Sequence record: NC_061440.1
DNA length: 64,000 nt
Reading direction: 5' to 3' (one strand)
Shown: one piece after another, positions 1 through 59,464 of the stretch
Layout of the letters: each line of letters opens with the position of its first letter
How positions within the stretch are numbered: position 1 is the first letter of the stretch
Notes under the pieces: model-generated
What the model saw: the letters and a program-made list of their open reading frames with translations, nothing else
Databases searched by the model: none
What the model was told of the DNA's origin: nothing
Position numbers and translations under genes: made by a program

Positions 1-1
1 C

Positions 2-2329
2 GCACCGCGTATCTCAACAGGCTGTCTGGCGCTTGACATGTATTTGTCTGGCGGTATCGTACCTGGTGGCTGGTACACATTCAGCGGCGGTGAGCAGTCA
101 TGTAAGTCAACAATGACCATGAGCATTATGGCGAGCCTGATTCGTCTGAAATACTCTGGCATTAGCGTGGTGTTCGACTACGAAGGTTCAACCGATGCCG
201 AGTACGTTGCTGGTCAGTTGAAAACGTTCGGCGTTAAGGTCGACCCGAAAACTATCTTCGGTGTGCGTGACGATAAAGACGGTAGCTGGATCGTTAAGCC
301 CAAGATCCGTTACTACGCACCAGACAACGGTGAGCGCTTCTTCGATTATATGTCGATGCTGCGTCGTCGTCTGCCTGACAAAATCGTTGAGAAAGACGGC
401 ACCGCGTATTACATCTTTGAGAACAACAAAGAGAACGCGAAGAAGCTGGCAGGCAAGTACGATAAGAAATGGTTCAGCCGTAACAACCAGTTCAAAGTAC
501 CTGCGCCAGACGGTCACATGCAGGCGATGGTTATCGTTGACTCCTATCCTGCGATGATGCCAGATCAGGTCGATGACGATGACGGCTCGAAAGCAATGGC
601 GCTGCAAGCGCGTATGTTCTCTGACGGCATCAAACGTTTCCGTGGCGGTATGCGTCGTAAGATGATGACTATCGTTGGCGTTAACCAGTTGCGTCAGAAG
701 CCCGCAGTAATGTTCGGCAGCCCTGAGTATGAGCCTGGTGGTGATGCGTTGAAGTTCTATTGCTTCGACCGTGACACTCTGATTCGTACTGACCACGGCG
801 TGTTGACTGCACCGCAGATCAAAGCGCTGATGGACGAAGGCAAAGAAGTTGCCGTTGAGTCGTTCGATGGTTATCAGAAAATCAATGGTGCGTGGCAGGT
901 TGAAGACGCTCCGTTCCCGTTCGAACTGAATGCTGGTGGTCATGTGTATGTCGGCTCGGCCGAACATCGCCAGTTCACGTTCATGCACGATCTGACTGCC
1001 GAAGGTACTCCAGTTCTGCGTCCTGAATGGAACACGCTGAATCAACTGGCTCAGTACCCAGAGCAGAAAGGTCAGTACGCTGGTCTGCGTGTACCACCAG
1101 TTAAGGAACTGAAAGAGAATGTTCCTGACGCCTTCGATGAAGCCTCACAACTGGTAAGCAATCTGCTTGGAAACTGTGACCCTGTTAGCAAGCAACTGCC
1201 TCTGGTGACTCATGGTGATACCACCTACGCCGCAAACTGTCTGTTCATCGACACTGTGGGCGAAGACACCGACACTGGTTCGTTCTCGTTCTGGGTAGAG
1301 AAGTTACTGGCCATCGGCGTATTTGCTTACGCTGACGAAAGCGGTATCTGGATTCCAGGTCTGAACAAACACGAACTGGAAGCGGCTGTAGCGCAGGACG
1401 AACTCGGTGCGTTTGCTGGTATCAGTTTTGAAGCGACCTGTCGTCAACGTCAGACTCAAATGCTGACCGTGATTGTTGATCACTTCCCAGAGCTGGTGCG
1501 TTACGTTCTGGACTATCAGTTGCAGACAGGTGAAGATAAAATCTATCTGGCTCCTGAGCAGGACTTCGCACAGGCGCTTGACCTGATTCTGCACAAAGAG
1601 ATCGCTGACTACGATGACATGTACGACCTGCTGATGTTCCAGCTGGCGTATGTCGATGACTGGTACAACTTCGACTCTGCAATTCTGCCTGTGCCGTTTA
1701 CGCTTCGTGCGCTCAACGAACAGCGTGAGTTCTGGGACGTGAACGTTGAAGAAACGTCGGTAGTAATCACCAACGGCTTCGTCAGTCACAACAGCGACGT
1801 GCGTGTGCGTCTGGCTTCTCGTGCGGTACCAGAAGGCTGGCCGAAACTGAAAGATGCTCCTGGCATCGTCGGTGAGAAGTCGGTAACAGTTGAAGGCGGT
1901 ACTGACCGCTATCGCTTCATCGCTGCTAAGACCATTAAGAACAAGATGGGCGGCATCCCTAACCAGCAGACGTGGTTACGTTTGTGGGAAGCTGACGGTA
2001 ACGGTGAAGCTCGCGGCTTCGACCCAGTGTTCGATACGTGGCACTACCTGAAAACTCTGGGTCTGGTCAACGGTAGCCGTAAGTCTTTCAAGCTGAAAGC
2101 GCCGTGCCCGCTCGCATCTGATGTTAAGATGGATTGGGATGACTTCCGTACACTCATCAACGGCAGCAAAGAGCAAGTTGTTGGCGTGTGTAAGAAACTG
2201 AAAGTCAAACCTGCTGGCCTGCGTCTGTGGTGCTTCAAGTTCGTTCAGTCCACTAAGGGCAACGAAATGTTGAAGAACGCAATCAGTAAGTCTGCCAAGA
2301 AGTCTGATGACGACGACGGCGACGAGTAA
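2..2329 (+). CDS. uvsX: RecA/UvsX-like recombinase, intein-containing; 5' end lies upstream of the window
   Basis: Frame is open from nt 2 (APRISTGCLALD, RecA-like). Walker A variant GGEQSCKST, Walker B VIVDSY, NQLRQK..MFGSPEYEPGGDALKFY, KTIKNK. Confidence 0.9.
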   Translation, partial: APRISTGCLALDMYLSGGIVPGGWYTFSGGEQSCKSTMTMSIMASLIRLKYSGISVVFDYEGSTDAEYVAGQLKTFGVKVDPKTIFGVRDDKDGSWIVKPKIRYYAPDNGERFFDYMSMLRRRLPDKIVEKDGTAYYIFENNKENAKKLAGKYDKKWFSRNNQFKVPAPDGHMQAMVIVDSYPAMMPDQVDDDDGSKAMALQARMFSDGIKRFRGGMRRKMMTIVGVNQLRQKPAVMFGSPEYEPGGDALKFYCFDRDTLIRTDHGVLTAPQIKALMDEGKEVAVESFDGYQKINGAWQVEDAPFPFELNAGGHVYVGSAEHRQFTFMHDLTAEGTPVLRPEWNTLNQLAQYPEQKGQYAGLRVPPVKELKENVPDAFDEASQLVSNLLGNCDPVSKQLPLVTHGDTTYAANCLFIDTVGEDTDTGSFSFWVEKLLAIGVFAYADESGIWIPGLNKHELEAAVAQDELGAFAGISFEATCRQRQTQMLTVIVDHFPELVRYVLDYQLQTGEDKIYLAPEQDFAQALDLILHKEIADYDDMYDLLMFQLAYVDDWYNFDSAILPVPFTLRALNEQREFWDVNVEETSVVITNGFVSHNSDVRVRLASRAVPEGWPKLKDAPGIVGEKSVTVEGGTDRYRFIAAKTIKNKMGGIPNQQTWLRLWEADGNGEARGFDPVFDTWHYLKTLGLVNGSRKSFKLKAPCPLASDVKMDWDDFRTLINGSKEQVVGVCKKLKVKPAGLRLWCFKFVQSTKGNEMLKNAISKSAKKSDDDDGDE
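761..1792 (+). mobile_element. Intein (344 aa) in RecA/UvsX, inserted at ALKFY|SDVR
   Basis: Begins C1 (CFDRDTLIRT), block B-like SAEH, block F WDVNVEE, ends VSHN followed by +1 Ser. Removing it restores the RecA ALKFYS.VR motif. Confidence 0.92.
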
Positions 2330-2371: not shown

Positions 2372-2800
2372 ATGCGCACTCAAATCTATACGGCTGATAT
2401 CGTCAATCTGGAAACAGTGGTCGTTGACGAAGAAGGCCAAGAGACACGCAGTCCGACAATCGTTCCTAATCTCGAAGGCGAACGTGATCTGACTGTTAGC
2501 ACTCTCGGTACTATCATGGCTACCGTGACCGCTGAACCAAATCCTGACGCTCGCATGATCGTTTTGGTGTCTCGCGCCCTGTTCCCTGCTTTCGCAGACC
2601 CTGAAGGTGACCTGTTCGATATCTTCGATCCAATCGAACGCGTTGCTGATGTTGTTGCTGGAAACGTTGGCAGCATTCTCGGTATGCAGGTAGTAATCAA
2701 CGATAAGTCCGACGACAACGTTCTGGCTATCGCTGATGTTCTCGATAACGAAGCTGGCGTTACTATTCGCACCTTCGGCGCTGCGCTCGTTCGCGCGTAA
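2372..2800 (+). CDS. Hypothetical protein (142 aa)
   Basis: ORF with GGAG RBS. Confidence 0.75.
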   Translation: MRTQIYTADIVNLETVVVDEEGQETRSPTIVPNLEGERDLTVSTLGTIMATVTAEPNPDARMIVLVSRALFPAFADPEGDLFDIFDPIERVADVVAGNVGSILGMQVVINDKSDDNVLAIADVLDNEAGVTIRTFGAALVRA

Positions 2801-2806
2801 GTAAAC

Positions 2807-2834
2807 TTGTGCGGGAAAGCATTATCCCGCACAA
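2807..2834. repeat. Perfect 10-bp inverted repeat
   Basis: TTGTGCGGGA-8 nt-TCCCGCACAA, no T tail. Confidence 0.8.
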
Positions 2835-2841
2835 TCCCTCT

Positions 2842-2894
2842 CTCGATAGGCAATACGCCACGAGAAAACAAATCACTCGATAGGCAATACGCCA
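2842..2894 (+). repeat. 19-bp direct repeat x2
   Basis: CTCGATAGGCAATACGCCA at 2842-2860 and 2876-2894, directly before the RBS of ORF 2905. Confidence 0.9.
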
Positions 2895-2904
2895 GGAGTA
2901 ATGT

Positions 2905-3606
2905 ATGAAAAAGATTCAACACGTAACACTTCCGACCGATGCACTCAACGGACTCATTCACGGTTATTACCACCACAGCAAAACCACTGATGAATTTTGC
3001 AGATCGTTGATCTATATTGACGTGACCGCCCGCAGCGCCTCAGATGCGCTGTATGCTATATTGAAACGTGAGCCGACAAAAGGCATTGTCCCTATGGGAT
3101 ATGATTGCTTACGAGAAGCACGTGGGCACACTGCTCCAGCACAACTCGCAATCGTATTGTCCAGCAACCTGTTGCATATAGATAATACGAAGATGGCCAG
3201 AGGCGTACAGGCCATCTTTAATGCTCTGGCCATAACCACGCACACAAACGATACTCAAATAACTGTGTACGGCGAGCCTGGAGTAAGTAAGATTCTCAAC
3301 ATAATGCGCGACATTCAATATAAAGAATATATTAACGCGCCTGAATCCGACATTGTGCTTGGCGACTTTAACCTTGAGTCGAACATGACTATAGACCATT
3401 TCGTTCACATGGCTATCGATCCTAAGTTCGAAGAAGCTATTCGCAATTCTCCTGCCACAGAATTTAAACTGGGCAGCAGTTTCATGTTCATGCACCCAGA
3501 TGAATTGGCTAAGGTTGTACGCATGGTCCGCCGTTGCAGTAAAATCTGCATCATGCACCCTGACATTCATCGCTATTACTTTGAGAACGTAATCTGTAAA
3601 TACTAA
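2905..3606 (+). CDS. Hypothetical protein (233 aa)
   Basis: ORF with AGGAG RBS. Confidence 0.75.
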   Translation: MKKIQHVTLPTDALNGLIHGYYHHSKTTDEFCRSLIYIDVTARSASDALYAILKREPTKGIVPMGYDCLREARGHTAPAQLAIVLSSNLLHIDNTKMARGVQAIFNALAITTHTNDTQITVYGEPGVSKILNIMRDIQYKEYINAPESDIVLGDFNLESNMTIDHFVHMAIDPKFEEAIRNSPATEFKLGSSFMFMHPDELAKVVRMVRRCSKICIMHPDIHRYYFENVICKY

Positions 3607-3708
3607 TCACCAAACCGAACACATTGCTGTGTGTAGTCTAGCCCGACTTGGGCAGGGGAGAGCCGGATGGCCTCCCCATTTTTTTATCTACACGCTGCGG
3701 AGAACAGT

Positions 3709-4710
3709 ATGTCTAAAACGAAGTCAACGCCACAGACCTTTCTCGATCTATTCCTAAAAGACGTTAAGCTCTTTCTGCCTAGATTCGACAAAGGGCTGGA
3801 CGCGTACTTATTAAAGTGCAAAGGCAAGCCGGGTCCTTATGGTGTATCGCTTCATCAATACATGAAGTGGCTAAATCCTGTAGCGCGACTTCCTGCCAAC
3901 GCAAGCGAAGTGTCTATCATCACATCAGGCTACCTGCATTACTTTTGGCAGCTCGCTAAACCTAACTTTGTGTTGGAGCCTGTGCTTGTCAATCACTTGG
4001 TTGAGTCTGTGTTGCCAGACGAACTCCCGGCTGAGATTCTTCAACGTCTGCCTTACTGGAGTCAGTGGATTACGTTGCCTCTACATCTGATAAGCAAAGA
4101 CAATATTCTGGATCTGGACTTCGATGGTGCTTTCGTTGGGTATACATCAATCGACAACAGACCTGCGCTTGTCCTTGCTGCGCCGTTTGTCTCCAACAAT
4201 CAAAGCATTCGTTCGAACGACTTCACGCCGTTCGTTACATCTCATGTGTTTCTGGATGCTCCTGTACGTCCAGAGTTTTTGGTGAGGAACAGTCACATCC
4301 TTAACGTTGCCTCTGACGCAATGAGCAAAGAAGCCTACGCAACACTGATAATCAACATTCACCACTTCTTGGTGAAAGTGATCAACTGTGTCATGTATAT
4401 CTGCTCTCAACAGGAAGCATTGTATCAGGAAGGTCATTCTCAACCTAAGCCTCAGCGTTTAGGTAAGAGCTATCGCATCACGCCACCGAAAGATGATCGC
4501 ATGATCACGGTAGGCGCCGAGATGACCAGGATTCTCAAAGACTTCGAAGCAGAAGTCGAAGCGTGTACTCGCGCTTTCAATGGGCGTAAGCCGCATATAC
4601 GAAAAGCGCACTACCACCACTTCTGGACAGGACCGAAAGTAGGAGTTCGTAGCCTTGTCTGCAAGTGGTTGCCACCAAGTATTGTTCGCGGCACTATCGT
4701 AGAGCAATAA
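3709..4710 (+). CDS. AcrVA2/FinQ-family protein (probable start 3709; track start 3667)
   Basis: C-terminal RKPHIRKAHYHHFWTG...KWLPP, plus LPDELP..IL..LP.W and a MYIC helix, in the order I recall for AcrVA2. Confidence 0.75.
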   Translation: MSKTKSTPQTFLDLFLKDVKLFLPRFDKGLDAYLLKCKGKPGPYGVSLHQYMKWLNPVARLPANASEVSIITSGYLHYFWQLAKPNFVLEPVLVNHLVESVLPDELPAEILQRLPYWSQWITLPLHLISKDNILDLDFDGAFVGYTSIDNRPALVLAAPFVSNNQSIRSNDFTPFVTSHVFLDAPVRPEFLVRNSHILNVASDAMSKEAYATLIINIHHFLVKVINCVMYICSQQEALYQEGHSQPKPQRLGKSYRITPPKDDRMITVGAEMTRILKDFEAEVEACTRAFNGRKPHIRKAHYHHFWTGPKVGVRSLVCKWLPPSIVRGTIVEQ

Positions 4711-4755
4711 CTTTTATCTCAACTCCACGTATGGGCGTTATGCCCGGAGACTATT

Positions 4756-5523
4756 ATGAAATCTCGTGTACAACATGCGTATATTCCTGATATGGAATCG
4801 TTTGACCCTTACGTCCGTTCTCTGTGCCATATGGCGCGAGCACTGGACACATCGAATGCTAACTACGGTAAACTGAAACGTGTCGTGATAATCGGCACTT
4901 CGAAGCGCGTGGTCGAAGCCTACGTTAAGCAGTTACTCAACACAAACAACCTGCCGCACACTCTCATTTGCTTTGGCGTAGACGAACCGCCTATCAGTCA
5001 CCGCGATTATACCTACGCTGGCGCCCACGTTGTGCTGATGCACGACCTGACCTACGTTGATAGCGGTACGATGGGCAAAGTCGCCACGCGTGTGATTGAA
5101 ATCATCGACAGCCTCAAACAGAAGCCTGGCGAAACAGAACTTAAAAATTCCGAGCTGTCTATGGTGTATTCGAATCCTCTGCTGTGGCGATCCATTATCG
5201 ACTACGGTGCTTCCGTTTCTCTGCGCATGAATGGCAGCAACATTGAATACCGTAGCGGTCTGGTGTCGTCTATTGGCTTCGATGCGTTGCTGCGTTGTGA
5301 AAGCAATGCAGACTACCATGAACTTCGCGCTGATACGATTACGATCGGTCTGGAGTTCTTCTGCGTACACACGGACTACCTGCTGTCAAAAGTACACAAC
5401 CTGCTGTGGTCACTTGCATGTGATGATTGCAAGTTCAAAAAGACGCACCGTATTATCTTCCATGAAGACTTCCGACGCTTATTCTTCGAAGAATATCTCT
5501 TGAGGGACTTCCAGGGCTTTTAA
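4756..5523 (+). CDS. Hypothetical protein (255 aa)
   Basis: ORF with GGAG RBS. Confidence 0.75.
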   Translation: MKSRVQHAYIPDMESFDPYVRSLCHMARALDTSNANYGKLKRVVIIGTSKRVVEAYVKQLLNTNNLPHTLICFGVDEPPISHRDYTYAGAHVVLMHDLTYVDSGTMGKVATRVIEIIDSLKQKPGETELKNSELSMVYSNPLLWRSIIDYGASVSLRMNGSNIEYRSGLVSSIGFDALLRCESNADYHELRADTITIGLEFFCVHTDYLLSKVHNLLWSLACDDCKFKKTHRIIFHEDFRRLFFEEYLLRDFQGF

Positions 5524-5596
5524 GATTATTCTTAGCCTGCTCTCTAATTTCAATATGTTGGCAAGTAGTGCTGACATATCGTTATTGGAGAATAAC

Positions 5597-5857
5597 ATGT
5601 GCGAACGTAGCCATTTGCGGTTGAAGTACCTCGCACGGTCATCTGGCTGGTGCAATAATAAAGTAAACGCTTGTAGTGAGCGGAAGGCGAAGAATGTACA
5701 ATGCGAAGAATTTTTGGCAGCGACCAAAGATTGCCGCAGCGAACAGAAGTCGTCCAGTGTTGTTTCATTCTTCAAAGGTCATGAGCTGGTTGGTCAGGCT
5801 ATATGGCATGAGATAGAGGGAGACAGCACACTTCAATTCCGGTTGCTACTTGCTTAA
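5597..5857 (+). CDS. Small Cys-containing hypothetical protein
   Basis: GGAG RBS before ATG 5597; followed by a terminator. Confidence 0.55.
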   Translation: MCERSHLRLKYLARSSGWCNNKVNACSERKAKNVQCEEFLAATKDCRSEQKSSSVVSFFKGHELVGQAIWHEIEGDSTLQFRLLLA

Positions 5858-5863
5858 CGACAG

Positions 5864-5904
5864 AGGGCCTTTCAGAGTAATATCTGGTGGGCCCTTTCTT
5901 CTTT
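5864..5904 (+). terminator. Intrinsic terminator
   Basis: AGGGCC...GGCCCT stem followed by TTCTTCTTT. Confidence 0.6.
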
Positions 5905-5956
5905 CTATGCTAATTTTGCCTGTCACTAACACACCAACCGACTTCGGGGTATCACT

Positions 5957-7645
5957 ATGTCTTTGATTAAGATCGAAGGCGTCCAATCACTGTCTGCGCC
6001 TACCAAAGCCCAGAAAGACGCCGCTGTTTATATGTTTGGTCCTAAGGGCCATTCAATCGTCGCCGTACTCGACAAGTTCAGTCGTGTAAAAGAACTGCGC
6101 ACTGCCCACATTGACGGTCTGCTCAAGCTGATGAAAGAAGGTGAAGATGACGAGATCGTCAAGTTCACTGCATCGGCTGCTGGTAAGAAATCTCTGACTG
6201 CGGCCAAGCAGTTCGCTACAGCCAAAACTCTGGCCATGTCCATCAAAGCGCTGAAACTGATTCGCGTTCCGATGAAGTGGATCGCTGGTCACTCTGATGC
6301 GGCAGCAGCCCGTATCACCGAGACGAAAGAAATTCGCGCCCGTAAGACTGCCGGCAACAAGCCAGAGAAGCCAATCAAACTCGATAATCCTCATGCGCCA
6401 GAAGCGACAACGGCCGAACAGACCAAACAGAACTCTGCCTTGAGCAAAATCTACAAGCTGCCTAAAAACGGCAATGGTTATGACAATAAACTGTCTCCGC
6501 AGTGGAACGCCCTGATTAAAACAATCAACACTACCTTCAAAGGGATGTTCGCTGCCAAGTGGATCAAAGCCGAAGGTGCTATTCGCATCACGCCTAAAGG
6601 TCCTGGGTATCGCTCAATCCCTGAAGCCTTCTTGGGTGCTATCCCTGAAGACAATAGCTGGCAGATGTATACCGTGTCACCGCGCGGGCAGGTTGAAGGC
6701 TACGCTATCGGCAATCAACTGACTATGGCTTCTGTTGCTATATTCATGCGTGACTTCATGGCTACCAAGAAGACTCCTGATGTTGCAGCCATCAATAAGA
6801 TGGTTGCTGGCGCTACTGCGTTCAACACAGAAGTCCTGCACACCGAAGAGAACAGTCCAGAACTGAAAGAACTGGGTGATGCTCAACGCAAGCTGGACGC
6901 AGAAGGTGTAGCAAAAGGCGCCATCAACTCTGTTACCAAGATCACTTCGGCTAACGTGTCTAAGATTACACGTGGAGCGCAGATTAAGATCGAAGAACAG
7001 TTGAACAACAAGCTGGGGAATGTTCTGTATAACGCGAACTTCCGTGAGAAAGGCACCTACTCAGCGCTCGATGGTTACCTGTTTGAAATGACTCAGGCGA
7101 CTAAGCATAGCGGTTCGGGCAACAAGTACGCAGCGTTCGCACTGATTCCTCCTCAGAAAGGTACTCAACTTGCAGGTCAGACTTGGCGTGTAGCGGCATT
7201 TAACATGGGCCGCCAGACTGCCACTGACCTGATTGATATCGGTGCTAAGTTCTCTCTGGCGAAAGTGAAGTCTGCTATCAAACAGATTGACGGCGTTTCT
7301 TCTACAAAGTACACACCGTCAGGTAAGTCGCCTGACTCTTTGGTGGATGAAATCGCAGAAACCCCTGCTCGTAAAATCGCAGCAATGCCTTTACAGGGAC
7401 GCGAAGAATACTTCAACGCCCTGAACGCTGTCATTCAGCGTAACATGCCTCACGCAAACGTGATTGTGTCTTCTGATGGCTTGACGATAACAAAAGGCAG
7501 TAAGATGCACACCGTGAGTCTGACTGATAAAGGCTGGTTCATTAAGACTGGCGCCACAGGCAAACCAAAACGTATCGGCGTAACGTTCGATATTGTTGAC
7601 CTTCTGGGCATGATCGACAAGAGCATTCTCAAACCTAAAGCGTAA
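5957..7645 (+). CDS. Lys/Ala-rich hypothetical protein (562 aa)
   Basis: Long ORF with high-expression-like codon usage, bounded by terminators. Confidence 0.85.
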   Translation: MSLIKIEGVQSLSAPTKAQKDAAVYMFGPKGHSIVAVLDKFSRVKELRTAHIDGLLKLMKEGEDDEIVKFTASAAGKKSLTAAKQFATAKTLAMSIKALKLIRVPMKWIAGHSDAAAARITETKEIRARKTAGNKPEKPIKLDNPHAPEATTAEQTKQNSALSKIYKLPKNGNGYDNKLSPQWNALIKTINTTFKGMFAAKWIKAEGAIRITPKGPGYRSIPEAFLGAIPEDNSWQMYTVSPRGQVEGYAIGNQLTMASVAIFMRDFMATKKTPDVAAINKMVAGATAFNTEVLHTEENSPELKELGDAQRKLDAEGVAKGAINSVTKITSANVSKITRGAQIKIEEQLNNKLGNVLYNANFREKGTYSALDGYLFEMTQATKHSGSGNKYAAFALIPPQKGTQLAGQTWRVAAFNMGRQTATDLIDIGAKFSLAKVKSAIKQIDGVSSTKYTPSGKSPDSLVDEIAETPARKIAAMPLQGREEYFNALNAVIQRNMPHANVIVSSDGLTITKGSKMHTVSLTDKGWFIKTGATGKPKRIGVTFDIVDLLGMIDKSILKPKA

Positions 7646-7788: not shown

Positions 7789-7819
7789 CATACAACTACT
7801 GCCGAGGGGCACACAATGA
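7789..7819 (+). repeat. 31-bp leader repeat copy 1, containing the SD hairpin TGCC-GAGG-GGCA
   Basis: CATACAACTACTGCCGAGGGGCACACAATGA, identical to 8261-8291. Confidence 0.95.
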
Positions 7820-8260: not shown

Positions 8261-8291
8261 CATACAACTACTGCCGAGGGGCACACAATGA
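8261..8291 (+). repeat. 31-bp leader repeat copy 2, containing an SD hairpin
   Basis: Identical to 7789-7819. Confidence 0.95.
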
Positions 8292-18551: not shown

Positions 18552-20048
18552 ATGAATATGAAAAACATTAAACACACTTTCCGACTGACAGACCTTGTAC
18601 GCATCTCCAAAACCCTGCTTCCTGGTCTGAATAAATCCACCGCAGGCCTTGAGGCGATTGTTGTTGGTCGCACCACAGGTCTTATGTACCAGTTACACAT
18701 TAAAGGTCAAGGTGAAGTAGACAACTTTTATCCACAGGAAACATTGAGTCTGATTAGCCACAACAACGGCGAACTGCTTGACCAGTGGGAAGCGGGTGAC
18801 TATGGCCGTGACAAGAAAAAGAAACGCAAGATCCCAAAAGAACTGCGTAACTTCACGGCAATCCTGCCTGTGACCTGCAATGCCGATTGTTCGTTCTGTC
18901 CTGAGAAAGAGATGGAGCAGAAAGCCAACCAGAAAGAGTGGCAAGATGGTTTGATTGCCGAGATCAAACGCATGTACAAGAAAACGAAGTTCGACCACGT
19001 ATCAATCAGCGGCGGCGAACCGACGTTGCGTACAAAGTTCCTGTTCGAAACGATCGACCGTATTCAGAAAGAAACGCCGATCAAGAAAGTCGGTCTGACT
19101 TCTAACGGTCAGTTCCTTGAGAAACCAAACAGCACGTTCGACTTCTTAGACCGTAACACTGCGCCTGAGATGACCAGCAAGCTGTCGCATCTGAATATCA
19201 GTATGCACTCGTTCAACCGTGACCTTGCAAACAAGATCATGGGTGTGAACTACAAACAGACCCTGGAAGATTTAGTTCGCTTCCGCCGCCAGCTCGGCCG
19301 TGACGTTAGTTTCCACATTAACTTCGTGATCAATGACCAGACTGGTTCGATTACGGAAGAGTTCAAACGCGCCGCTAACTTCATGCGAGCCAACCCGTTC
19401 ATCGACGTTGTGTTCCGTGTTGACTACAACGATGTTGAACTGTCTAAGGCTCTGCGTGATTACGCTATGGAATATGAAGCGTATCTGACTAAGCTGCGTG
19501 ATAATGCGAAGCGCCCTAAGAAGGGAATCATTCGTGAGCCGAAAGCACCGCATATCGTTCAGAAGTTTGATCGCTTCTTCGGTGGCCAGAACCTTGAAGA
19601 CGTTGAGAGCGCTTGGACTACAGGTTGCCCGTCATGCTTCACTCATGCGTCGAACCCTGTCAATAACAGTCGTGCGTATTTGAAAGCGTCCTCGTATGAA
19701 CCGAACGACGACGAAGAAGAATACACTGAGCTGGTGTACCACATGGACGGCGCTCTGTATTGGGATTGGACTCGCAATGACCCAGTAGCACTGCCGCGCT
19801 CAAAACGTTTCGACTTCGAAATGAAAGAAGAAGACTCTGTTACTGAGGGTCGCTGTTCATTCGGACCTGCTGCACCTCATCATTGTTCGTATGATTCAAC
19901 TGGTACAACGGTCGCACCAAAAGCTGTGAAGAAACCTAAGAAGGTGGCACCTGCTAAGAAAGCGAAGAAAGTGGGTGGAAAAGTTTCGAGCGTTCCTGGT
20001 GCTGCACCTGGTGTTTGTGGCTACGGCAATAGTCGTTGTGGTTATTAA
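18552..20048 (+). CDS. Radical SAM protein with an N-terminal SH3-like domain and a Cys/Gly-rich tail
   Basis: CNADCSFC (18876-18899), SISGGEPT, LTSNG, LNISMHS. Confidence 0.9.
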   Translation: MNMKNIKHTFRLTDLVRISKTLLPGLNKSTAGLEAIVVGRTTGLMYQLHIKGQGEVDNFYPQETLSLISHNNGELLDQWEAGDYGRDKKKKRKIPKELRNFTAILPVTCNADCSFCPEKEMEQKANQKEWQDGLIAEIKRMYKKTKFDHVSISGGEPTLRTKFLFETIDRIQKETPIKKVGLTSNGQFLEKPNSTFDFLDRNTAPEMTSKLSHLNISMHSFNRDLANKIMGVNYKQTLEDLVRFRRQLGRDVSFHINFVINDQTGSITEEFKRAANFMRANPFIDVVFRVDYNDVELSKALRDYAMEYEAYLTKLRDNAKRPKKGIIREPKAPHIVQKFDRFFGGQNLEDVESAWTTGCPSCFTHASNPVNNSRAYLKASSYEPNDDEEEYTELVYHMDGALYWDWTRNDPVALPRSKRFDFEMKEEDSVTEGRCSFGPAAPHHCSYDSTGTTVAPKAVKKPKKVAPAKKAKKVGGKVSSVPGAAPGVCGYGNSRCGY

Positions 20049-26237: not shown

Positions 26238-27218
26238 ATGCGTTTTGGTTTCGCCTGCAAATTGCTTGACGCAAACAACAAACAGCCATTCACGAATAAG
26301 AGCCTTAGCTATAAACATTTCTCTGCGTTGTCTGCTGCTGACCAACATACGAAACTGTTGGAAGTTGTCACGCATAACCTGACTTCATTGCTTGATATGA
26401 TCAAGCACGTTGGTCGTCTGCGTACAGACCTGCGCATGTTTCGAATCACCAGTGAATTGTTGCCTCTGTACACTCACCCTAAAGTGTTTCACATGTACAT
26501 GCGCCATGACGTTGTTACTATCACCGAATCGCTACTCGCCTTGTGTGGTGAAGCGGCTAGACGTCATGACGTGCGATTATCATTTCATCCAGGTCAGTTC
26601 ACGGTACTCGCATCTGATCGACCAGATGTTGTCCAGAACTCAATAGCCGAACTTGAGTATCATGCGTACTGTGCCTATCACATGGGGTATGGTCGCCGCT
26701 TCCAAGACTTCAAGATCAACATTCACCTTAGCGGTAGACTTGGCGCTTCGGGATTCAGGCAAGCGCATTCGAAACTTTCTGATCGCTGCCGGAACATGTT
26801 GACCGTAGAGAACGACGAAATCACTTCGAGCCTCGAAGATTGTTTAGCGCTGGCAGACATATGCCCGATCGTCCTCGACATTCATCATCACTGGGTAATG
26901 ACTAACGAATACATACAACCGACCGACGACCGTGTTCAGCGTGTCATTGATTCTTGGCGAGGCGTTCGACCTGCTGCTCACTACTCTGTGTCAAAGCCTG
27001 AGTTTGTACCATCGCGTGGACTGCCCGACCAGAACAAGCTGTCCGCTAATCGAATGCAGTTACGTGCTCATGCTGATTATTACCACAACGAAGACGTAAA
27101 CGAGTGGGCCACTAGTTTCACTGATTTTGACCTGATGTGTGAGTCAAAAGCGAAAAATAGGGCTAGACTGAAACTGGCGTGTTTTAGCGTCAACTCTGCA
27201 AATAATTGGACAAAATGA
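26238..27218 (+). CDS. uvsE: UV damage endonuclease (UVDE/UvsE)
   Basis: RFGFAC, FRITSELLP..THP, RLSFHPGQF, LTVENDE, VLDIHHH, HYS, AHADY, LMCESKAK. Confidence 0.95.
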   Translation: MRFGFACKLLDANNKQPFTNKSLSYKHFSALSAADQHTKLLEVVTHNLTSLLDMIKHVGRLRTDLRMFRITSELLPLYTHPKVFHMYMRHDVVTITESLLALCGEAARRHDVRLSFHPGQFTVLASDRPDVVQNSIAELEYHAYCAYHMGYGRRFQDFKINIHLSGRLGASGFRQAHSKLSDRCRNMLTVENDEITSSLEDCLALADICPIVLDIHHHWVMTNEYIQPTDDRVQRVIDSWRGVRPAAHYSVSKPEFVPSRGLPDQNKLSANRMQLRAHADYYHNEDVNEWATSFTDFDLMCESKAKNRARLKLACFSVNSANNWTK

Positions 27219-55774: not shown

Positions 55775-57808
55775 ATGAAAATGGCCAAAGCGCCGAAGGC
55801 TGCCAAAGTTAAAAAGAATACCGGTGACGGTTCCCAAGAAGGGTTCGTCATTGCGGAAGGACTTGACGGGATTCGTTTGAATCCGGGAATGTACATGGGT
55901 GAACGTGGTGCCGACATGGCGTACCGCGGAGTTAAGGAACCTGTCGATAACGTCTATGACGAATTGATGGCGGGTCGCACCAAAGTTCTGGAAGTTGTGA
56001 TTGACTACGACAACGATCTGAACATCGTAGCCGATATGGCGAAAGGCATTCCGACCGACTTCAAGAAACTGAAAGATGGTTCGAAAGAAACTATCATGAC
56101 CGCAGCGTTTAGCCGTGCTCATGCTGGTGGTAAGTTCAACGACCAAGCATATAAGACCTCTGCCGGTACTCACGGCGTAGGCGTTGCAGCACTGAACGCA
56201 ATCTCCAGTCAGTTGCGTGTATGGTCAATGTACAAAGGTGGCTGCGCATACCAGATGTGGGAATGCGGTGTTGCCAAGTCTGGTAAAGACCCTAAGCAGG
56301 TCAAAGCCGTAGACAAAGATGTTATGAGTCTGCTGCGTGAAAAGAAACACAGCAAGTACGGTACGATTGTCGCATGGACTCTCGACCAGACCGTTGTGTC
56401 TGCTGACGTACAGCGCGGTAAGAAGTTGCCGAAGAACTATCGTCACGCTTCGCCAGACCCAGCACGTATCGGTGAGTGGCTTCGCAACATGTCGCTGCTT
56501 AACCCAGGCTTCGAGATTCGCTTGACGCTTATCAAGAAGGGCAAGCGTAAAGAGTTCACGTTCCACAACAAGAAAGACCTTGCGTTTATCGTGAAGACGA
56601 TGGTAGACGAACGCGAGTTAGAGATCGTCGGTAAGCCGTTCACGTTCCAGCATGAGAACATCACGGCAGCGCTTGCGTGGACTAACCATGCAGACACTGA
56701 CAACTTCCTGTCTTTCGTTAACACCAGCCCTACAGTTGACGGCGGTTGGCACGTTGTTGGTTTCCGTGATGCGTTGTTTGAAGCTATCAAGCCTTTCATG
56801 AAAGAGCCGAAAGGTAAAGGCAAGAAGAAGCAGGGCTTCAAGCAAGAAGACTTGCTTATCGGTCTGACTGGTATGTTCGACTGGCGTATGCACGGTGCTC
56901 AATACACCTCACAGGTTAAAGATAAGCTGGCGAGCCGTGTTGAGAAAGAAGTGTACGAGCTGATGAAAGAACAGCTTGTGAAATACTTCAAGGACAATAA
57001 GAAGGTCGCAACGACGATCATCAAACGCGCCGAAGCAATGAACAAAGGCCGCGAAGAATTGTCCGCAGTTGTGAAATCTATGGCAGACACGAAGAAGAAG
57101 CTGAAAGGCAACTCGCTCCCTGCTGACCTGATCTCTGCGCTCAAGTGTAAGCCGCATGAGCGTGAGCTTATCGTGGTGGAAGGTGATTCTGCTGGTGGTA
57201 CTGCTAAACATGCGCGTAACCCTGACCATCAGGAAGTTATGCTCGCTGGTGGTAAGCCGCTGAACGGTCTGAAAGCAAGTCTGGCTGACGTACTCAAGCA
57301 CAAAGAAGTGCAGGGCATGTTGGTGTCTGTCGGCGCTGACCTGAAATCGCTTGACCCGAAAGCTGAAAACCCAGTGTTGAGCACGAAGAACCTGCGTATC
57401 GGTAACTTGCTCTTCCTGATGGATGCTGACCCTGACGGCTTCCACATCGCAACGTTGTTCTTGGGCGTTATCTATCGTCTGCTGCCTGATCTGATGAAAG
57501 AGGGTCGCGTGTGGATTGTCGATGCACCTCTGTATAACGTGATGCACAAAGGCATTCACTACGGTGGTATGACGTTCGAAGAATGCCGTTCGAAAGCACC
57601 GTCTGCTGTAAAAGACAAAGAGATTGTACGCGCTAAAGGTTGGGGTGAAGTTGAGCCTGACGTGCTTGAAGCTATCGCGTTCAATCCGAAGACTCGCCGT
57701 TTGATTCGCGTTAACCCGTTCGTTAGCGTAGAACAAGAGCGTTTCTTCCGTGGTGTTGTGGCAGAAGATGCCGTGCATCGTCGTCGTCTGCTGGGTCTGG
57801 AGGATTAA
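55775..57808 (+). CDS. Type IIA topoisomerase B subunit (GyrB/ParE-like)
   Basis: GHKL motifs EPVDNVYDE, KGIP, HAGGKF, GTHGVGVAALNA; TOPRIM motifs VEGDSAGG, MDADPDGFHI. Confidence 0.97.
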   Translation: MKMAKAPKAAKVKKNTGDGSQEGFVIAEGLDGIRLNPGMYMGERGADMAYRGVKEPVDNVYDELMAGRTKVLEVVIDYDNDLNIVADMAKGIPTDFKKLKDGSKETIMTAAFSRAHAGGKFNDQAYKTSAGTHGVGVAALNAISSQLRVWSMYKGGCAYQMWECGVAKSGKDPKQVKAVDKDVMSLLREKKHSKYGTIVAWTLDQTVVSADVQRGKKLPKNYRHASPDPARIGEWLRNMSLLNPGFEIRLTLIKKGKRKEFTFHNKKDLAFIVKTMVDERELEIVGKPFTFQHENITAALAWTNHADTDNFLSFVNTSPTVDGGWHVVGFRDALFEAIKPFMKEPKGKGKKKQGFKQEDLLIGLTGMFDWRMHGAQYTSQVKDKLASRVEKEVYELMKEQLVKYFKDNKKVATTIIKRAEAMNKGREELSAVVKSMADTKKKLKGNSLPADLISALKCKPHERELIVVEGDSAGGTAKHARNPDHQEVMLAGGKPLNGLKASLADVLKHKEVQGMLVSVGADLKSLDPKAENPVLSTKNLRIGNLLFLMDADPDGFHIATLFLGVIYRLLPDLMKEGRVWIVDAPLYNVMHKGIHYGGMTFEECRSKAPSAVKDKEIVRAKGWGEVEPDVLEAIAFNPKTRRLIRVNPFVSVEQERFFRGVVAEDAVHRRRLLGLED

Positions 57809-57811
57809 GTA

Positions 57812-59464
57812 ATGGCAATTACGCCGAAGAAAGTCAAAAAGGTCAAAGCGACTGCCGTAGCAAAAGCCGCTAAGCCTGCAAAGCTCAAGTCGAAAGCGGT
57901 ATCTGCTGACGACATTAAAAAGAAGAAAAAGAAAAGCACCGAAGCGTCTGCAACAACGGCGGTCGGCACTTCTCTCTATCCGATGCTCGGACAAGACGAG
58001 TCGCTGATTCGTGACGAGAACCTCGCGGACTATACGCGCCGTGCTCTCTTCCAGTACGGCTCATACGTTGTTGAAGATCGTGCTATCGCTGACTACCGTG
58101 ACGGCCTCAAGCCTGTACACCGTGCGCTGCTTTGGTCGCTATGTGACTTGGGCTTACGTCCCGGCGGAGCATTCAAGAAGTCTGCACGTACCGTTGGTGA
58201 TGCGTTAGGTAAGTATCACCCGCACGGCGATGCTGCTTGTTACGGTGCGATGGTAACGATTGCGAATACCGTGCCACCAGCCGTAGCAGGTCAAGGTAAC
58301 TGGGGCGACCCTGTAGCACCTGCTGCTGCGATGCGTTATACCGAAGCGAAGATGAGTAAGTTTGCGGGTAGCTTCCTGCTGGACCCAGACTATCTCGAAG
58401 TGACGCCGATGGTAGACAACTTCTCGAACGACATGAAGATACCTCTGTATCTGCCTGCGCTGCTGCCGTACATGTTGTTCAATGGTAGTGTGCCTGCTCC
58501 AGCGTATGGAGTTAAGTGCGGTAACCCATCGTTCAGCTTTACGTCAGTCAGTAAGGTCGTGTGTGACATGCTGGCTGGCAAAGAGTACGATGCGAAGAAA
58601 CTGGCGAAGACGCTTGAGATTAACCACGAGTACGGTTGTCTTGACGCAAGCTCCGATGCTGACTATCTCGCACTGATCGAAACAGGTCGCGGCAAAGTAA
58701 CATACGAACCTCAGATGAAGGTCGATGAGAAGACGAAGACCATCACTGTGCAAACGTATGTGCCGGGCGGTATGTCTAACAACGCAGCCATCACGAAGAA
58801 GCTGGAGAAGATTGCAGAGTGGTCTGGTGTTGTCTCTGCGTCGAACGCCAGCTCGAAGAAGAACAAAGACGCGGGCCCGTGGGGTGCAGCGTTTGCGATT
58901 CGTTGTCGTGGTAGCGAAGACCTGCTGTATGAGATTGCGGAGAAGGTGAAGAAAGAAATCACCAGCGCCATCAACTACTCGCTGGGTGTTACCGTTCGCC
59001 GTGCTGATGCTTCAAACAAGTTCATGTACCTGAGCTACGTGAAGTATTTCAAAGCGTGGATTGCGTATCGCATTAAGCTGGAAACTGCGATGCTCACCAA
59101 CAAGAAGGCGAAAGCAGAGAAAGCCCTTCATCTGCAAGAAGTCTACTTGTGGGCAGTTGACAACATGAAGCAACTGCTGGCCGCACTACCGAAAGCCCTG
59201 ACCGCAGAAGACCCAGACAAGATGCTGGCGAAGCTGTGTAAGATTCCTGTTGAAGATGCGAAAATCATCCTCGACCGTCAAGTGCGTAAACTGGCGAAAC
59301 TAGAACGTGCTGGGCTGGTGGCCAAGATTAAGGAAATCAAGGCCGAGATTGCAGAGTATAAAGCGGGACTGAAAGAGCCTGGTAAATACGCTGCTGCGGG
59401 CACGGCCGCTAAAGTTAAGGCATACCTGAAATCGCCTGACGATAAGCTGCCTGTCGGTCTGTAA
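57812..59464 (+). CDS. Type IIA topoisomerase A subunit (GyrA/ParC-like, no beta-pinwheel CTD)
   Basis: DGLKPVHR, KKSARTVG, YHPHGD, GQGNWG, AAMRYTE (catalytic Tyr). Confidence 0.97.
   Translation: MAITPKKVKKVKATAVAKAAKPAKLKSKAVSADDIKKKKKKSTEASATTAVGTSLYPMLGQDESLIRDENLADYTRRALFQYGSYVVEDRAIADYRDGLKPVHRALLWSLCDLGLRPGGAFKKSARTVGDALGKYHPHGDAACYGAMVTIANTVPPAVAGQGNWGDPVAPAAAMRYTEAKMSKFAGSFLLDPDYLEVTPMVDNFSNDMKIPLYLPALLPYMLFNGSVPAPAYGVKCGNPSFSFTSVSKVVCDMLAGKEYDAKKLAKTLEINHEYGCLDASSDADYLALIETGRGKVTYEPQMKVDEKTKTITVQTYVPGGMSNNAAITKKLEKIAEWSGVVSASNASSKKNKDAGPWGAAFAIRCRGSEDLLYEIAEKVKKEITSAINYSLGVTVRRADASNKFMYLSYVKYFKAWIAYRIKLETAMLTNKKAKAEKALHLQEVYLWAVDNMKQLLAALPKALTAEDPDKMLAKLCKIPVEDAKIILDRQVRKLAKLERAGLVAKIKEIKAEIAEYKAGLKEPGKYAAAGTAAKVKAYLKSPDDKLPVGL

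What the first reader, a model, noticed from the sequence alone, without database searches (positions are those of the whole stretch)
3709..4710. AcrVA2/FinQ-family co-translational mRNA-silencing factor with an unknown target
Seen: C-terminal RKPHIRKAHYHHFWTGPK..LVCKWLPPSIV, preceded by FWQLAKPNFVL, LPDELPAEILQRLPYW and VMYICS, in a protein of about 333 aa. Knowledge (from memory): Moraxella AcrVA2 has the same order of motifs, including RPHIRRGHWHGYW.G. It binds nascent Cas12a and triggers degradation of its mRNA through a ribosome-associated C-terminal domain, and FinQ is a plasmid homolog. Inference: Cas12a is uncommon in Enterobacterales, so this protein probably silences a different host gene, such as a defence or conjugation gene.
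Basis: partly seen in the sequence, partly recalled or inferred. Interest (0 to 1): 0.85.

Follow-up and report, generated by a model that had tools for sequence, protein, structure and literature searches.

The report
AcrVA2/FinQ-family gene in Erwinia jumbo phage
This jumbo-phage gene is a genuine, intact relative of AcrVA2 and FinQ, proteins that shut off one chosen gene by destroying its mRNA during translation; its target here is unknown, and related phages carry very different versions of it in the same genomic slot.

Summary
Window 3709-4710 (+) is an intact 333-aa ORF holding every quoted motif. It is CDS pEaSNUABM22_00250 ("hypothetical protein") of Erwinia phage pEa_SNUABM_22, a 265-kb Alexandravirus.

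The AcrVA2/FinQ assignment holds:
- AcrVA2 (PDB 7ci1) is the only significant solved-structure hit, at E 8e-5 with the single sequence and 7e-49 with a family profile, over the full length.
- A confident AlphaFold model (pLDDT 91.8) finds only AcrVA2 chains in the PDB.
- Plasmid finQ genes come back by tblastn.
- Precomputed Pfam hits list PF26125 "AcrVA2-like" for this exact protein.
- The residues shown by mutation to matter in AcrVA2 are kept: W80, E90 (acidic, for D89) and H296/R298/H301.

The mechanism (ribosome-docked, nascent-peptide-triggered mRNA decay) and a non-Cas12a target are inferred only. The literature says such homologues are common on mobile elements without Cas12a, megaphages included, so this is a new member of a known kind.

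The added finding is that the gene fills a fixed slot after the SSB and RecA genes in every syntenic phage examined from four named Erwinia/Dickeya jumbo-phage genera and an unclassified group. Its body is swapped as a cassette: identity falls to 26-33% while RecA stays at 59-90%. It remains under purifying selection, with the signature residues intact in all alleles.

The parts
3709..4710 (+). CDS of the AcrVA2/FinQ-family protein (333 aa plus stop); pEaSNUABM22_00250
   Evidence: ORF and annotation; AcrVA2 sequence hits; structure model and fold match; Pfam PF26125.
3709..4056 (+). N-terminal, mostly helical region (residues 1-116). Residues 1-64 are poorly conserved. Residues 65-116 hold the conserved W80, E90, P107 and P115.
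   Evidence: Secondary structure; per-segment conservation.
3946..3948 (+). Codon of W80, the counterpart of AcrVA2 W79 (mutation there reduced function and binding)
   Evidence: Alignment; W in 126/130 family members; paper passage.
4057..4443 (+). Central beta-sheet plus long helix (residues 117-245). This is the most variable part of the protein and the presumed specificity region.
   Evidence: Residues 161-240 are about 50% identical among close alleles (52-75% in Alexandra) and mostly 2-18% in distant ones. Family-wide entropy is highest here and in residues 1-64.
4444..4707 (+). C-terminal conserved module (residues 246-333), the presumed effector and ribosome-docking part
   Evidence: Residues 291-327 form the most conserved segment, with a mean commonest-residue share of 0.63. 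Most distant hits in the exhaustive search align only here.
4594..4611 (+). H296-x-R298-x-x-H301 motif, the counterpart of AcrVA2 H286/R288/H291
   Evidence: Present in 128, 130 and 129 of 130 family members, and in all 12 syntenic phage alleles.
3655..3685 (+). GC-rich hairpin (3655-3677) followed by a T-run (3679-3685), terminator-like, directly upstream of the gene
   Evidence: Fold of 3640-3712 gives -29.2 kcal/mol, z = -3.0. Conserved in the syntenic phages, with a different but equivalent hairpin in Yoloswag and SNUABM_5. The simple terminator scan missed it because of a bulge.
3594..3654 (+). Conserved non-coding block upstream of the hairpin. It is kept even where the preceding gene is absent. 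It may hold a promoter or leader, but its function is unknown.
   Evidence: Alignment. A 19-nt core of the block (3625-3643) is unique in the window.
3699..3704 (+). Shine-Dalgarno-like GGAGAA, 5 nt upstream of the ATG at 3709

Best explanation
The gene encodes an intact, selected member of the AcrVA2/FinQ family (Pfam PF26125).

Shown here: homology, fold, signature residues, purifying selection, and a fixed but swappable genomic slot.

Inferred from the characterised relative: the conserved C-terminal module carrying H296-x-R298-x-x-H301 docks the protein on translating ribosomes. The variable N-terminal and central parts recognise the nascent N-terminal peptide of one particular protein. 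On recognition a cellular RNase is recruited and destroys that mRNA before translation finishes, so the target is never made.

The target is not Cas12a. The most likely target is a host immunity protein of Erwinia, Dickeya or related Enterobacterales. The different alleles in sister phages would then recognise different targets or target variants.
For: Membership:
- AcrVA2 is the only significant PDB sequence hit: E 8.3e-5 with the single sequence, collinear over residues 66-326, and E 7.4e-49 over chain residues 9-319 of 323 with a 130-sequence profile.
- The AF2 model has pLDDT 91.8 and pTM 0.89. Foldseek against the PDB gives AcrVA2 7ci2_A at E 1.5e-11 and TM 0.60/0.63, then 7ci1_A and 7ci1_B. 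The next hit has E 0.33.
- finQ genes are hit on plasmids. A family profile built without the query scores the query at 209 bits and FinQ at 177 bits (208 bits for the longer in-frame finQ ORF).
- Pfam PF26125 is listed for this protein.

Effector residues: W80, H296, R298 and H301 align with the residues whose mutation abolished mRNA down-regulation in AcrVA2. They are kept in 126-130 of 130 relatives and in all 12 syntenic alleles.

Architecture: the C-terminus is conserved and the N-terminal and central parts are variable, as the published model of constant effector plus variable recognition expects.

Functional gene: dN/dS is 0.05-0.20.

Conflict-type evolution:
- The gene occupies the same slot in every syntenic phage examined, yet falls to 26-33% identity where the neighbouring RecA keeps 59-90%.
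- Cassette swaps have sharp edges.
- dS is 0.9-1.6 against 0.4-0.7 for RecA in the same phage pairs.

Host: E. amylovora has type I-E CRISPR-Cas and a type I-F remnant.
Against: - There is no functional datum for this protein or any jumbo-phage member.
- The effector chemistry of the family is itself unresolved; the RNase is unidentified.
- Nothing in the sequence names a target.
- The gene lies among replication and recombination genes rather than in a recognisable anti-defence island. No neighbour matches PADLOC, Pfam or NCBIfam models of defence or anti-defence.
- Phages with different alleles (SNUABM_31 and SNUABM_32) both lyse 94/94 E. amylovora isolates (PMC9686651). The allele differences therefore do not show up as host-range differences on that species.
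- The terminator-like hairpin just upstream leaves the mode and timing of expression unknown.
Confidence: 0.55

Rival explanations
1. Same family and same mechanism, but the target belongs to a competing mobile element (another phage, a plasmid or a prophage) rather than to host immunity. This would be a FinQ-like role in conflict between elements, or in excluding a second infecting phage.
For: FinQ, the other member with a known phenotype, lowers transcript levels of a rival plasmid's transfer genes. Family members sit on conjugative plasmids beside transfer genes. Allele diversity among phages that all grow on the same uniform host is easier to explain if the targets are other, more diverse mobile elements.
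Against: A virulent jumbo phage gains more obviously from disabling host immunity. No candidate competitor target was identified, and there are no data.
Confidence: 0.15
2. Same family, but used for host takeover or for the phage's own timing. The protein would silence a conserved host housekeeping gene or one of the phage's own genes, rather than act as a counter-defence.
For: The slot is occupied in every syntenic genome examined, next to core sigma-like, SSB and RecA genes on the same strand. The gene therefore behaves like a core gene.
Against: A conserved housekeeping target would not predict 26-33% identity between alleles or cassette replacement. No neighbouring phage gene co-varies with the allele: SNUABM_23 and SNUABM_20 share their flanks at 99.3% and 94.8% but carry different alleles.
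Confidence: 0.12
3. The fold and motif are retained but the activity is different. The protein might bind and block a finished protein directly, or bind nucleic acid, with no translation-coupled mRNA decay.
For: AcrVA2 also binds mature apo-Cas12a and an internal Cas12a peptide in crystals. Identity to AcrVA2 is only about 15%. The biochemical role of the H-x-R-x-x-H motif is not known.
Against: The residues tied specifically to mRNA down-regulation, and not to target binding, are the most conserved in the family and are intact here.
Confidence: 0.1
4. It is a true anti-CRISPR against Cas12a, like Moraxella AcrVA2.
For: Homology to AcrVA2.
Against: The known host carries type I-E CRISPR-Cas and a type I-F remnant, with no Cas12 mentioned. 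The presumed recognition parts are the least conserved. The source paper states that most homologues occur where Cas12a is absent. No acr-associated regulator gene was recognised next to it.
Confidence: 0.03

Closest known systems
AcrVA2 of Moraxella bovoculi prophages (PDB 7ci1/7ci2; Pfam PF26125 AcrVA2-like)
   Same: Similar length (333 aa here; the PDB chain is 323 aa). Alignment is collinear over the full length. The three-part fold is the same (TM about 0.6). W80 and H296/R298/H301 match W79 and H286/R288/H291, and E90 matches D89. Both are carried by a mobile element.
   Different: About 15% identity. The N-terminal and central parts, presumed to give specificity, are unrelated in detail. 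The host has no known Cas12a. The carrier is a virulent 265-kb jumbo phage, not a prophage. There is no AcrVA1-like neighbour. The function is untested.
FinQ, fertility-inhibition protein of IncI1 plasmids
   Same: Same family: tblastn E 2e-4 to 8e-4, BLASTP 7e-11 over residues 104-323, and a shared profile match. The C-terminal motif is the same. Both occur in Enterobacterales.
   Different: FinQ is plasmid-borne and lies near the transfer-gene (tra/trb) clusters (excA, trbA). Its phenotype is inhibition of F-plasmid transfer with reduced tra transcripts. Identity is 23%. The phage protein sits among replication genes of a lytic phage.
Uncharacterised homologues in other jumbo phages (Yoloswag, JA13, RisingSun gp126, Klebsiella FBKp24 gp195; PHROG 6160)
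   Same: Same family and fold (BFVD Foldseek E 1e-19 to 9e-26; PHROG 6160 E 4e-48). Yoloswag carries its copy in the same post-RecA slot.
   Different: All are unannotated or mis-annotated (for example 'putative mycothiosynthase'). RisingSun, JA13 and FBKp24 carry the gene in unrelated contexts.
AcrVA2-like ORF43 of Shewanella phage vB_SbaS_Y11 (PMC10846135)
   Same: A published precedent for an AcrVA2 homologue in an isolated lytic phage. The Shewanella genome that paper examined has a type I-E system.
   Different: A 63-kb siphovirus. That paper treats the gene as a putative Cas12a inhibitor and reports no allele series or synteny analysis.

Membership tests
AcrVA2/FinQ family (Pfam PF26125 AcrVA2-like) | Significant, collinear, full-length sequence similarity to AcrVA2 | tested here: met
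   phmmer against the PDB gives E 8.3e-5, residues 66-326 against 66-316. The profile gives E 7.4e-49 over chain residues 9-319 of 323. A precomputed Pfam PF26125 hit exists on this exact protein. The local Pfam copy lacks that model, which explains the empty result.
AcrVA2/FinQ family (Pfam PF26125 AcrVA2-like) | Same three-dimensional fold as AcrVA2 | tested here: met
   AF2 pLDDT 91.8. The Foldseek top three PDB hits are all AcrVA2 chains, with E 1.5e-11 to 3.4e-10, probability 1.00 and TM 0.53-0.63. No other hit is below E 0.3.
AcrVA2/FinQ family (Pfam PF26125 AcrVA2-like) | C-terminal H-x-R-x-x-H motif (AcrVA2 H286/R288/H291), needed for mRNA down-regulation | tested here: met
   H296, R298 and H301 are present and aligned. 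They are kept in 128, 130 and 129 of 130 relatives and in all 12 syntenic alleles.
AcrVA2/FinQ family (Pfam PF26125 AcrVA2-like) | Conserved N-terminal tryptophan and acidic residue (AcrVA2 W79, D89) | tested here: met
   W80 is W in 126/130 relatives. E90 falls in a column with D in 97 and E in 14 of 130, so it is a conservative replacement.
AcrVA2/FinQ family (Pfam PF26125 AcrVA2-like) | Homology to plasmid FinQ | tested here: met
   tblastn hits to annotated finQ on IncI1-type plasmids. BLASTP E 7e-11. FinQ scores 177-208 bits against the family profile built without the query.
AcrVA2/FinQ family (Pfam PF26125 AcrVA2-like) | Translation-dependent, target-specific mRNA depletion | not testable with these tools
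   This needs expression data. It is known only for AcrVA2.
AcrVA2/FinQ family (Pfam PF26125 AcrVA2-like) | Association of the C-terminal part with ribosomes or polysomes | not testable with these tools
   Reported for AcrVA2 in a review of Marino et al. 2026. There are no data for this protein.
Type V-A anti-CRISPR (functional class) | The host carries Cas12a for the protein to inhibit | tested here: not met
   This was a literature check only. E. amylovora has type I-E CRISPR-Cas and a type I-F remnant, and the paper does not mention Cas12 (PMC9004355). I made no genome-wide survey of natural hosts.
Type V-A anti-CRISPR (functional class) | Acr-locus context (neighbouring acr genes or an aca-type regulator) | tested here: not met
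   The neighbours have no Pfam, NCBIfam or PADLOC match, and the only PHROG match among them is the UvsX-like recombinase. The context is the set of sigma-like, SSB and RecA/UvsX genes.
FinQ-type fertility inhibition | Carried on a conjugative plasmid beside transfer genes, and inhibits F transfer | tested here: not met
   This gene lies in a virulent phage genome. FinQ lies downstream of excA and directly upstream of trbA on IncI1 plasmids. The transfer-inhibition phenotype cannot be tested here.

The most novel reading that the evidence does not exclude
The post-RecA slot of these Erwinia/Dickeya jumbo phages may be a natural plug-in site for interchangeable specificity cassettes of a peptide-directed gene silencer. 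Each allele would keep the same ribosome-docking effector end but recognise a different host or competitor protein, and recombination at the conserved upstream hairpin and at the conserved 3' end of the gene (within or just after the C-terminal motif) would exchange them. If so, the allele series (at least six classes at 25-33% identity) is a ready-made data set for reading the recognition code of the family and for finding which immune proteins jumbo phages need to silence.
Probability: 0.3. Interest if true: 0.7.

Novelty: new member of a known kind. Interest (0 to 1): 0.4.

Why it matters
AcrVA2 is the first bacterial example of a protein that reads a nascent peptide and has the encoding mRNA destroyed. 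Only one target (Cas12a) is known for the family, plus one phenotype (FinQ against F-plasmid transfer), although roughly 1,800 homologues are reported. This work shows that large virulent phages of plant-associated Enterobacterales keep a member in a fixed slot in every syntenic genome examined and exchange its recognition part. That gives a compact, naturally varied set in which targets other than Cas12a could be sought. It also corrects annotation. The gene is labelled 'hypothetical' in dozens of phage genomes used or considered for fire-blight biocontrol, and 'mycothiosynthase' in one.

Tried and rejected
I used the exhaustive HMMER library instead: 1,743 representatives at E <= 1e-3.
- Pfam, NCBIfam and PADLOC scans of the protein returned nothing. 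The Pfam result is a gap in the local copy. A relative with a recorded PF26125 hit also returned nothing locally, and the precomputed table lists PF26125 for the window protein.
- The simple promoter and terminator scan gave no convincing sigma-70 promoter for the gene and missed the bulged hairpin. Searching the conserved upstream block elsewhere in the window found no second copy, so it is not a repeated phage promoter motif within this window.
- I looked for a donor of the divergent SNUABM_20 allele among sequenced phages. Only SNUABM_3, SNUABM_20 and SNUABM_40 carry it.
- I looked for a neighbouring gene that co-varies with the allele and could be a partner or target. None does.
- Positive selection was considered and rejected as the cause of divergence. 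dN/dS is 0.05-0.20 and dS is saturated, which points to old alleles moved by recombination.
- A whole-genome comparison of SNUABM_23 and SNUABM_20 was not done. The 94.8% downstream flank already shows that the two genomes are mosaic rather than isogenic.
- The neighbours g248, g249, g251, g252 and g253 gave no family matches.
- The 347-aa reading from ATG 3667 was rejected.
Full report
**What is there**

The window is 100% identical over the 3.2-kb test stretch (2800-6000) to Erwinia phage pEa_SNUABM_22. This is MZ443785.1, genus Alexandravirus, 265,146 bp, host Erwinia amylovora, isolated from stream water in Korea. Window position 1 corresponds to record position 201,147.

The finding's coordinates, 3709-4710 (+), are exactly the annotated CDS pEaSNUABM22_00250 (UAW96737.1, 'hypothetical protein'). 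A longer mechanical ORF starts at ATG 3667. That ATG lies in the loop of a conserved hairpin, and a GGAGAA Shine-Dalgarno precedes 3709, so the annotated start stands.

**Is it an AcrVA2/FinQ relative?**

Yes, by independent routes:

- **Sequence against solved structures.** With the single sequence, AcrVA2 (7ci1/7ci2) is the only significant hit, at E 8.3e-5, aligned collinearly over residues 66-326 against 66-316.
- **Exhaustive search and profile.** The HMMER search of 1.84 billion representatives found 1,743 relatives at E <= 1e-3 and 235 at E <= 1e-10. A profile of the query plus 129 of them hits AcrVA2 at E 7.4e-49 over residues 9-319 of 323, and hits nothing else in the PDB.
- **Independent profile.** A profile built without the query scores the query at 209 bits. 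Annotated FinQ scores 177 bits, and 208 bits when its longer in-frame ORF is used.
- **Plasmid finQ.** tblastn against plasmids returns 450 records, mostly conjugative Escherichia, Salmonella and Shigella plasmids. In nearly all of the sampled Enterobacterales rows the matched gene is annotated finQ. Direct BLASTP against one FinQ gives E 7e-11.
- **Structure.** The AlphaFold2 model is confident (pLDDT 91.8, pTM 0.89). Foldseek against the PDB returns only AcrVA2 chains as significant hits: E 1.5e-11 to 3.4e-10, probability 1.00, TM 0.53-0.63. The next hit has E 0.33.
- **Pfam.** The precomputed Pfam table attached to the contig index lists PF26125 'AcrVA2-like' for this exact protein. The empty Pfam result is a gap in the local library: a relative with a recorded PF26125 hit also gives nothing locally.
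- **Other libraries.** PHROGs places the protein in phrog_6160, function unknown, at E 4e-48. NCBIfam and PADLOC have no model for it.

**Signature residues**

Marino et al. (bioRxiv 10.1101/2022.11.29.518452) mutated residues conserved between AcrVA2 and FinQ. W79A and D89A reduced function. H286A, R288A and H291A abolished the loss of cas12a mRNA while leaving Cas12a binding intact.

The PDB chain numbering is shifted by one relative to the paper. Allowing for that, these residues align with W80, E90, H296, R298 and H301 of the phage protein. Counts in the 130-sequence alignment are:

| Residue here | Count in 130 relatives |
|---|---|
| W80 | W in 126 |
| E90 | column has D in 97, E in 14 |
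| H296 | H in 128 |
| R298 | R in 130 |
| H301 | H in 129 |

H303, W306, G308, W320 and P323 are also nearly invariant. By segment, residues 291-327 are the most conserved (mean share of the commonest residue 0.63). Residues 1-64 and 117-245 are the least conserved (0.23-0.30). Many distant relatives align only over about residues 220-327. This matches the published picture of a constant C-terminal effector and a divergent recognition part.

**What is known of the mechanism (literature, not tested here)**

AcrVA2 binds the nascent N-terminal peptide of Cas12a. The cas12a mRNA is then lost in a translation-dependent way that does not depend on promoter or codon usage. A 2026 review of the published version adds that the C-terminal part associates with ribosomes and polysomes, and that AcrVA2 does not cut the RNA itself but recruits a cellular enzyme (PMC13728456). 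FinQ inhibits F-plasmid transfer and lowers tra transcript levels.

The same paper states that about 1,800 orthologues occur on plasmids and 'megaphages', typically without Cas12a in the host. The 'unknown target' idea is the authors' own published expectation.

**Host**

[quoted passage not shown] An anti-Cas12a role is therefore unlikely. I did not survey natural host genomes myself.

**Genomic setting**

All genes in the neighbourhood are on the + strand. The order is:

- sigma-like factor
- SSB-like protein
- an 843-aa RecA/UvsX-like protein
- a 142-aa protein
- a 233-aa protein
- this gene
- a 255-aa protein
- an 86-aa protein
- a 562-aa protein

The names come from annotations in sister phages and from PHROG and Pfam hits.

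A GC-rich hairpin (3655-3677) followed by a T-run (3679-3685) lies about 23 nt before the start codon. The stretch 3640-3712 folds at -29.2 kcal/mol, z = -3.0. The hairpin is conserved in all 12 syntenic phages compared, with a different but equivalent hairpin in Yoloswag and SNUABM_5. A conserved 60-nt block precedes it, and a 19-nt core of that block is unique in the window. No convincing sigma-70 promoter was found. How and when the gene is transcribed is unknown.

**A fixed slot with exchangeable contents**

The same slot holds a family member in every syntenic genome examined. These are Alexandravirus (Alexandra, AD1, SNUABM_18, 20, 23, 32, 35), Sasquatchvirus Y3, Yoloswagvirus, Rivsvirus SNUABM_5 and the unclassified SNUABM_14 group.

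Protein identity to the window's copy is as follows:

| Gene | Range of identity to the window's copy |
|---|---|
| This gene, closer alleles | 68-75% |
| This gene, distant alleles | 26-33% |
| RecA-like gene, same genomes | 59-95% |
| SSB-like gene, same genomes | 65-97% |

Two pairs show clean cassette replacement:

- **SNUABM_23 against SNUABM_20.** They are 99.3% identical over 5.8 kb upstream and 94.8% over 6.1 kb downstream. They have no detectable nucleotide similarity from 24 nt before the start codon to about codon 299. Homology resumes at the C-terminal motif.
- **AD1 against SNUABM_32.** The pattern is the same, running from 20 nt before the start to 45 nt before the stop.

Within the closer alleles there is intragenic mosaicism. 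AD1 is 95-98% identical to the window protein over residues 241-333 but only about 50% over residues 161-240.

The gene is not decaying. dN/dS is 0.05-0.20 in all allele pairs. dS is 0.9-1.6 where RecA shows 0.4-0.7 in the same phage pairs, which indicates old alleles moved by recombination rather than accelerated amino-acid change. All 12 alleles keep W80, P107, P115, G140, G269, H296, R298, H301, H303, W306, W320 and P323. The SNUABM_20 allele has no closer donor among sequenced phages.

**Wider distribution**

- tblastn finds members in 84 phage records. These include other Erwinia jumbo phages in different contexts (RisingSun, Asesino), Klebsiella and Serratia 300-kb phages, and Leptospira, Pasteurella and Lactobacillus phages.
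- The scan of one genome per species returned 223 confirmed loci. The 80 listed span Gammaproteobacteria, Desulfovibrio and relatives, Leptospira, Acidobacteriota, Planctomycetota, Bacillota and others, with only one Moraxella entry.
- BFVD structure matches are all uncharacterised phage proteins.
- A metagenomic contig (L097) carries a 43%-identical copy in what looks like the same gene order.

**Interpretation**

The best-supported reading is an intact member of the AcrVA2/FinQ family that works as its characterised relative does, against something other than Cas12a. Three features are typical of genes at a host-parasite or parasite-parasite interface: a slot that is always occupied, a conserved effector end, and a swapped recognition part under purifying selection. 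I favour a host immunity target at about 0.55 for the whole statement. Membership itself is about 0.97.

The rivals are set out with their evidence in the Rival explanations section. In short:

- a competitor-element target in the manner of FinQ (0.15)
- host takeover or self-regulation (0.12)
- retained fold with a different activity (0.10)
- a true anti-Cas12a role (0.03)

One published observation weighs against a simple 'allele equals host range on E. amylovora' idea. SNUABM_31 and SNUABM_32 carry different alleles, and both lyse 94/94 E. amylovora isolates (PMC9686651).

**Novelty**

The family, its mechanism, its spread on mobile elements without Cas12a and its presence in very large phages are all published, and a Pfam model already captures this protein. 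A Shewanella phage homologue has also been described (PMC10846135). This is a new, uncharacterised member of a known kind.

The observation I did not find in the papers read is the fixed-slot cassette exchange across Erwinia/Dickeya jumbo phages, with junctions at the upstream hairpin and the C-terminal motif. It is descriptive and needs whole-genome recombination analysis to be firm.

Consensus lines printed by the alignment tools were not used. Residue counting on AcrVA2 used only the alignment printed.

Noticed in passing
window 3655-3685 and 3594-3654: A terminator-like hairpin plus T-run lies immediately upstream of the gene's ribosome-binding site. A conserved 60-nt non-coding block precedes it. 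Both are kept in sister phages whatever allele follows, and Yoloswag and SNUABM_5 have a different but equivalent hairpin. The expression logic (read-through, leader or unrecognised phage promoter) is unexplained.
   Followed up: partly
window 2372-7645: The gene sits in a small variable islet directly after a conserved core of sigma-like, SSB and RecA genes. The 142-aa gene (2372-2800) is either about 94% or 31-55% identical in most sister phages and has no match in Yoloswag. The 233-aa gene (2905-3606) is absent from SNUABM_23, SNUABM_20, Yoloswag and SNUABM_5. The 255-aa gene (4756-5523) also splits into 85-88% and 56-59% classes in most sister phages (37% in SNUABM_14; no match in Yoloswag or SNUABM_5). 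None of them has a family match.
   Followed up: partly
window 5957-7645: In the 562-aa protein, only the first ~27% aligns in most sister phages (at 51-91% identity) and the rest is replaced. This modular pattern resembles receptor-binding or depolymerase proteins, but there is no Pfam or PHROG hit.
   Followed up: no
window 1-2329 (gene starts before the window; L001 5090-7621): The RecA/UvsX-like protein is 843 aa long. Pfam's best RecA stretch covers only about 80 residues, while the PHROG UvsX profile is spread over about 750 residues. This implies large insertions in the recombinase.
   Followed up: partly
window 2842-2860 and 2876-2894; 7789-7815 and 8261-8287: There is a 19-nt exact direct repeat in the intergenic region before the 233-aa gene. 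There is also a 27-nt identical leader immediately upstream of two consecutive genes (starts at 7816 and 8288).
   Followed up: no
L014 6731-7822 (IncI1 plasmid NZ_CP145638.1): RefSeq annotates finQ as 259 aa (L014 7043-7822). An in-frame ORF of 363 aa is open upstream and matches the family profile over nearly its whole length (profile positions 8-336, 208 bits, against 177 bits for the annotated CDS). The annotated FinQ start is probably too far downstream.
   Followed up: partly
L015 3764-4765 (Erwinia phage RisingSun gp126): This gene is annotated 'putative mycothiosynthase' but is a clear AcrVA2/FinQ-family member (188 bits to the family profile; Foldseek E 1e-19). The annotation is probably wrong.
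   Followed up: partly
L012 5854-7478 (Dickeya phage JA13): The JA13 family member is not in the post-RecA slot. It overlaps by 4 nt the start of a gene annotated as a putative (p)ppGpp synthetase/hydrolase, which suggests a possible host-manipulation cluster.
   Followed up: no
tool libraries: The local Pfam-A copy lacks PF26125 'AcrVA2-like', although the precomputed table in the contig index has it. A 'no Pfam family' result for this family from the local scan is therefore a false negative.
   Followed up: yes
window 18552-20048, 26238-27218, 55775-59464: Other recognisable genes in the window are a radical-SAM protein, an endonuclease (phrog_8420) and the two subunits of a type II topoisomerase. 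There are no tRNA genes in the 64 kb.
   Followed up: no
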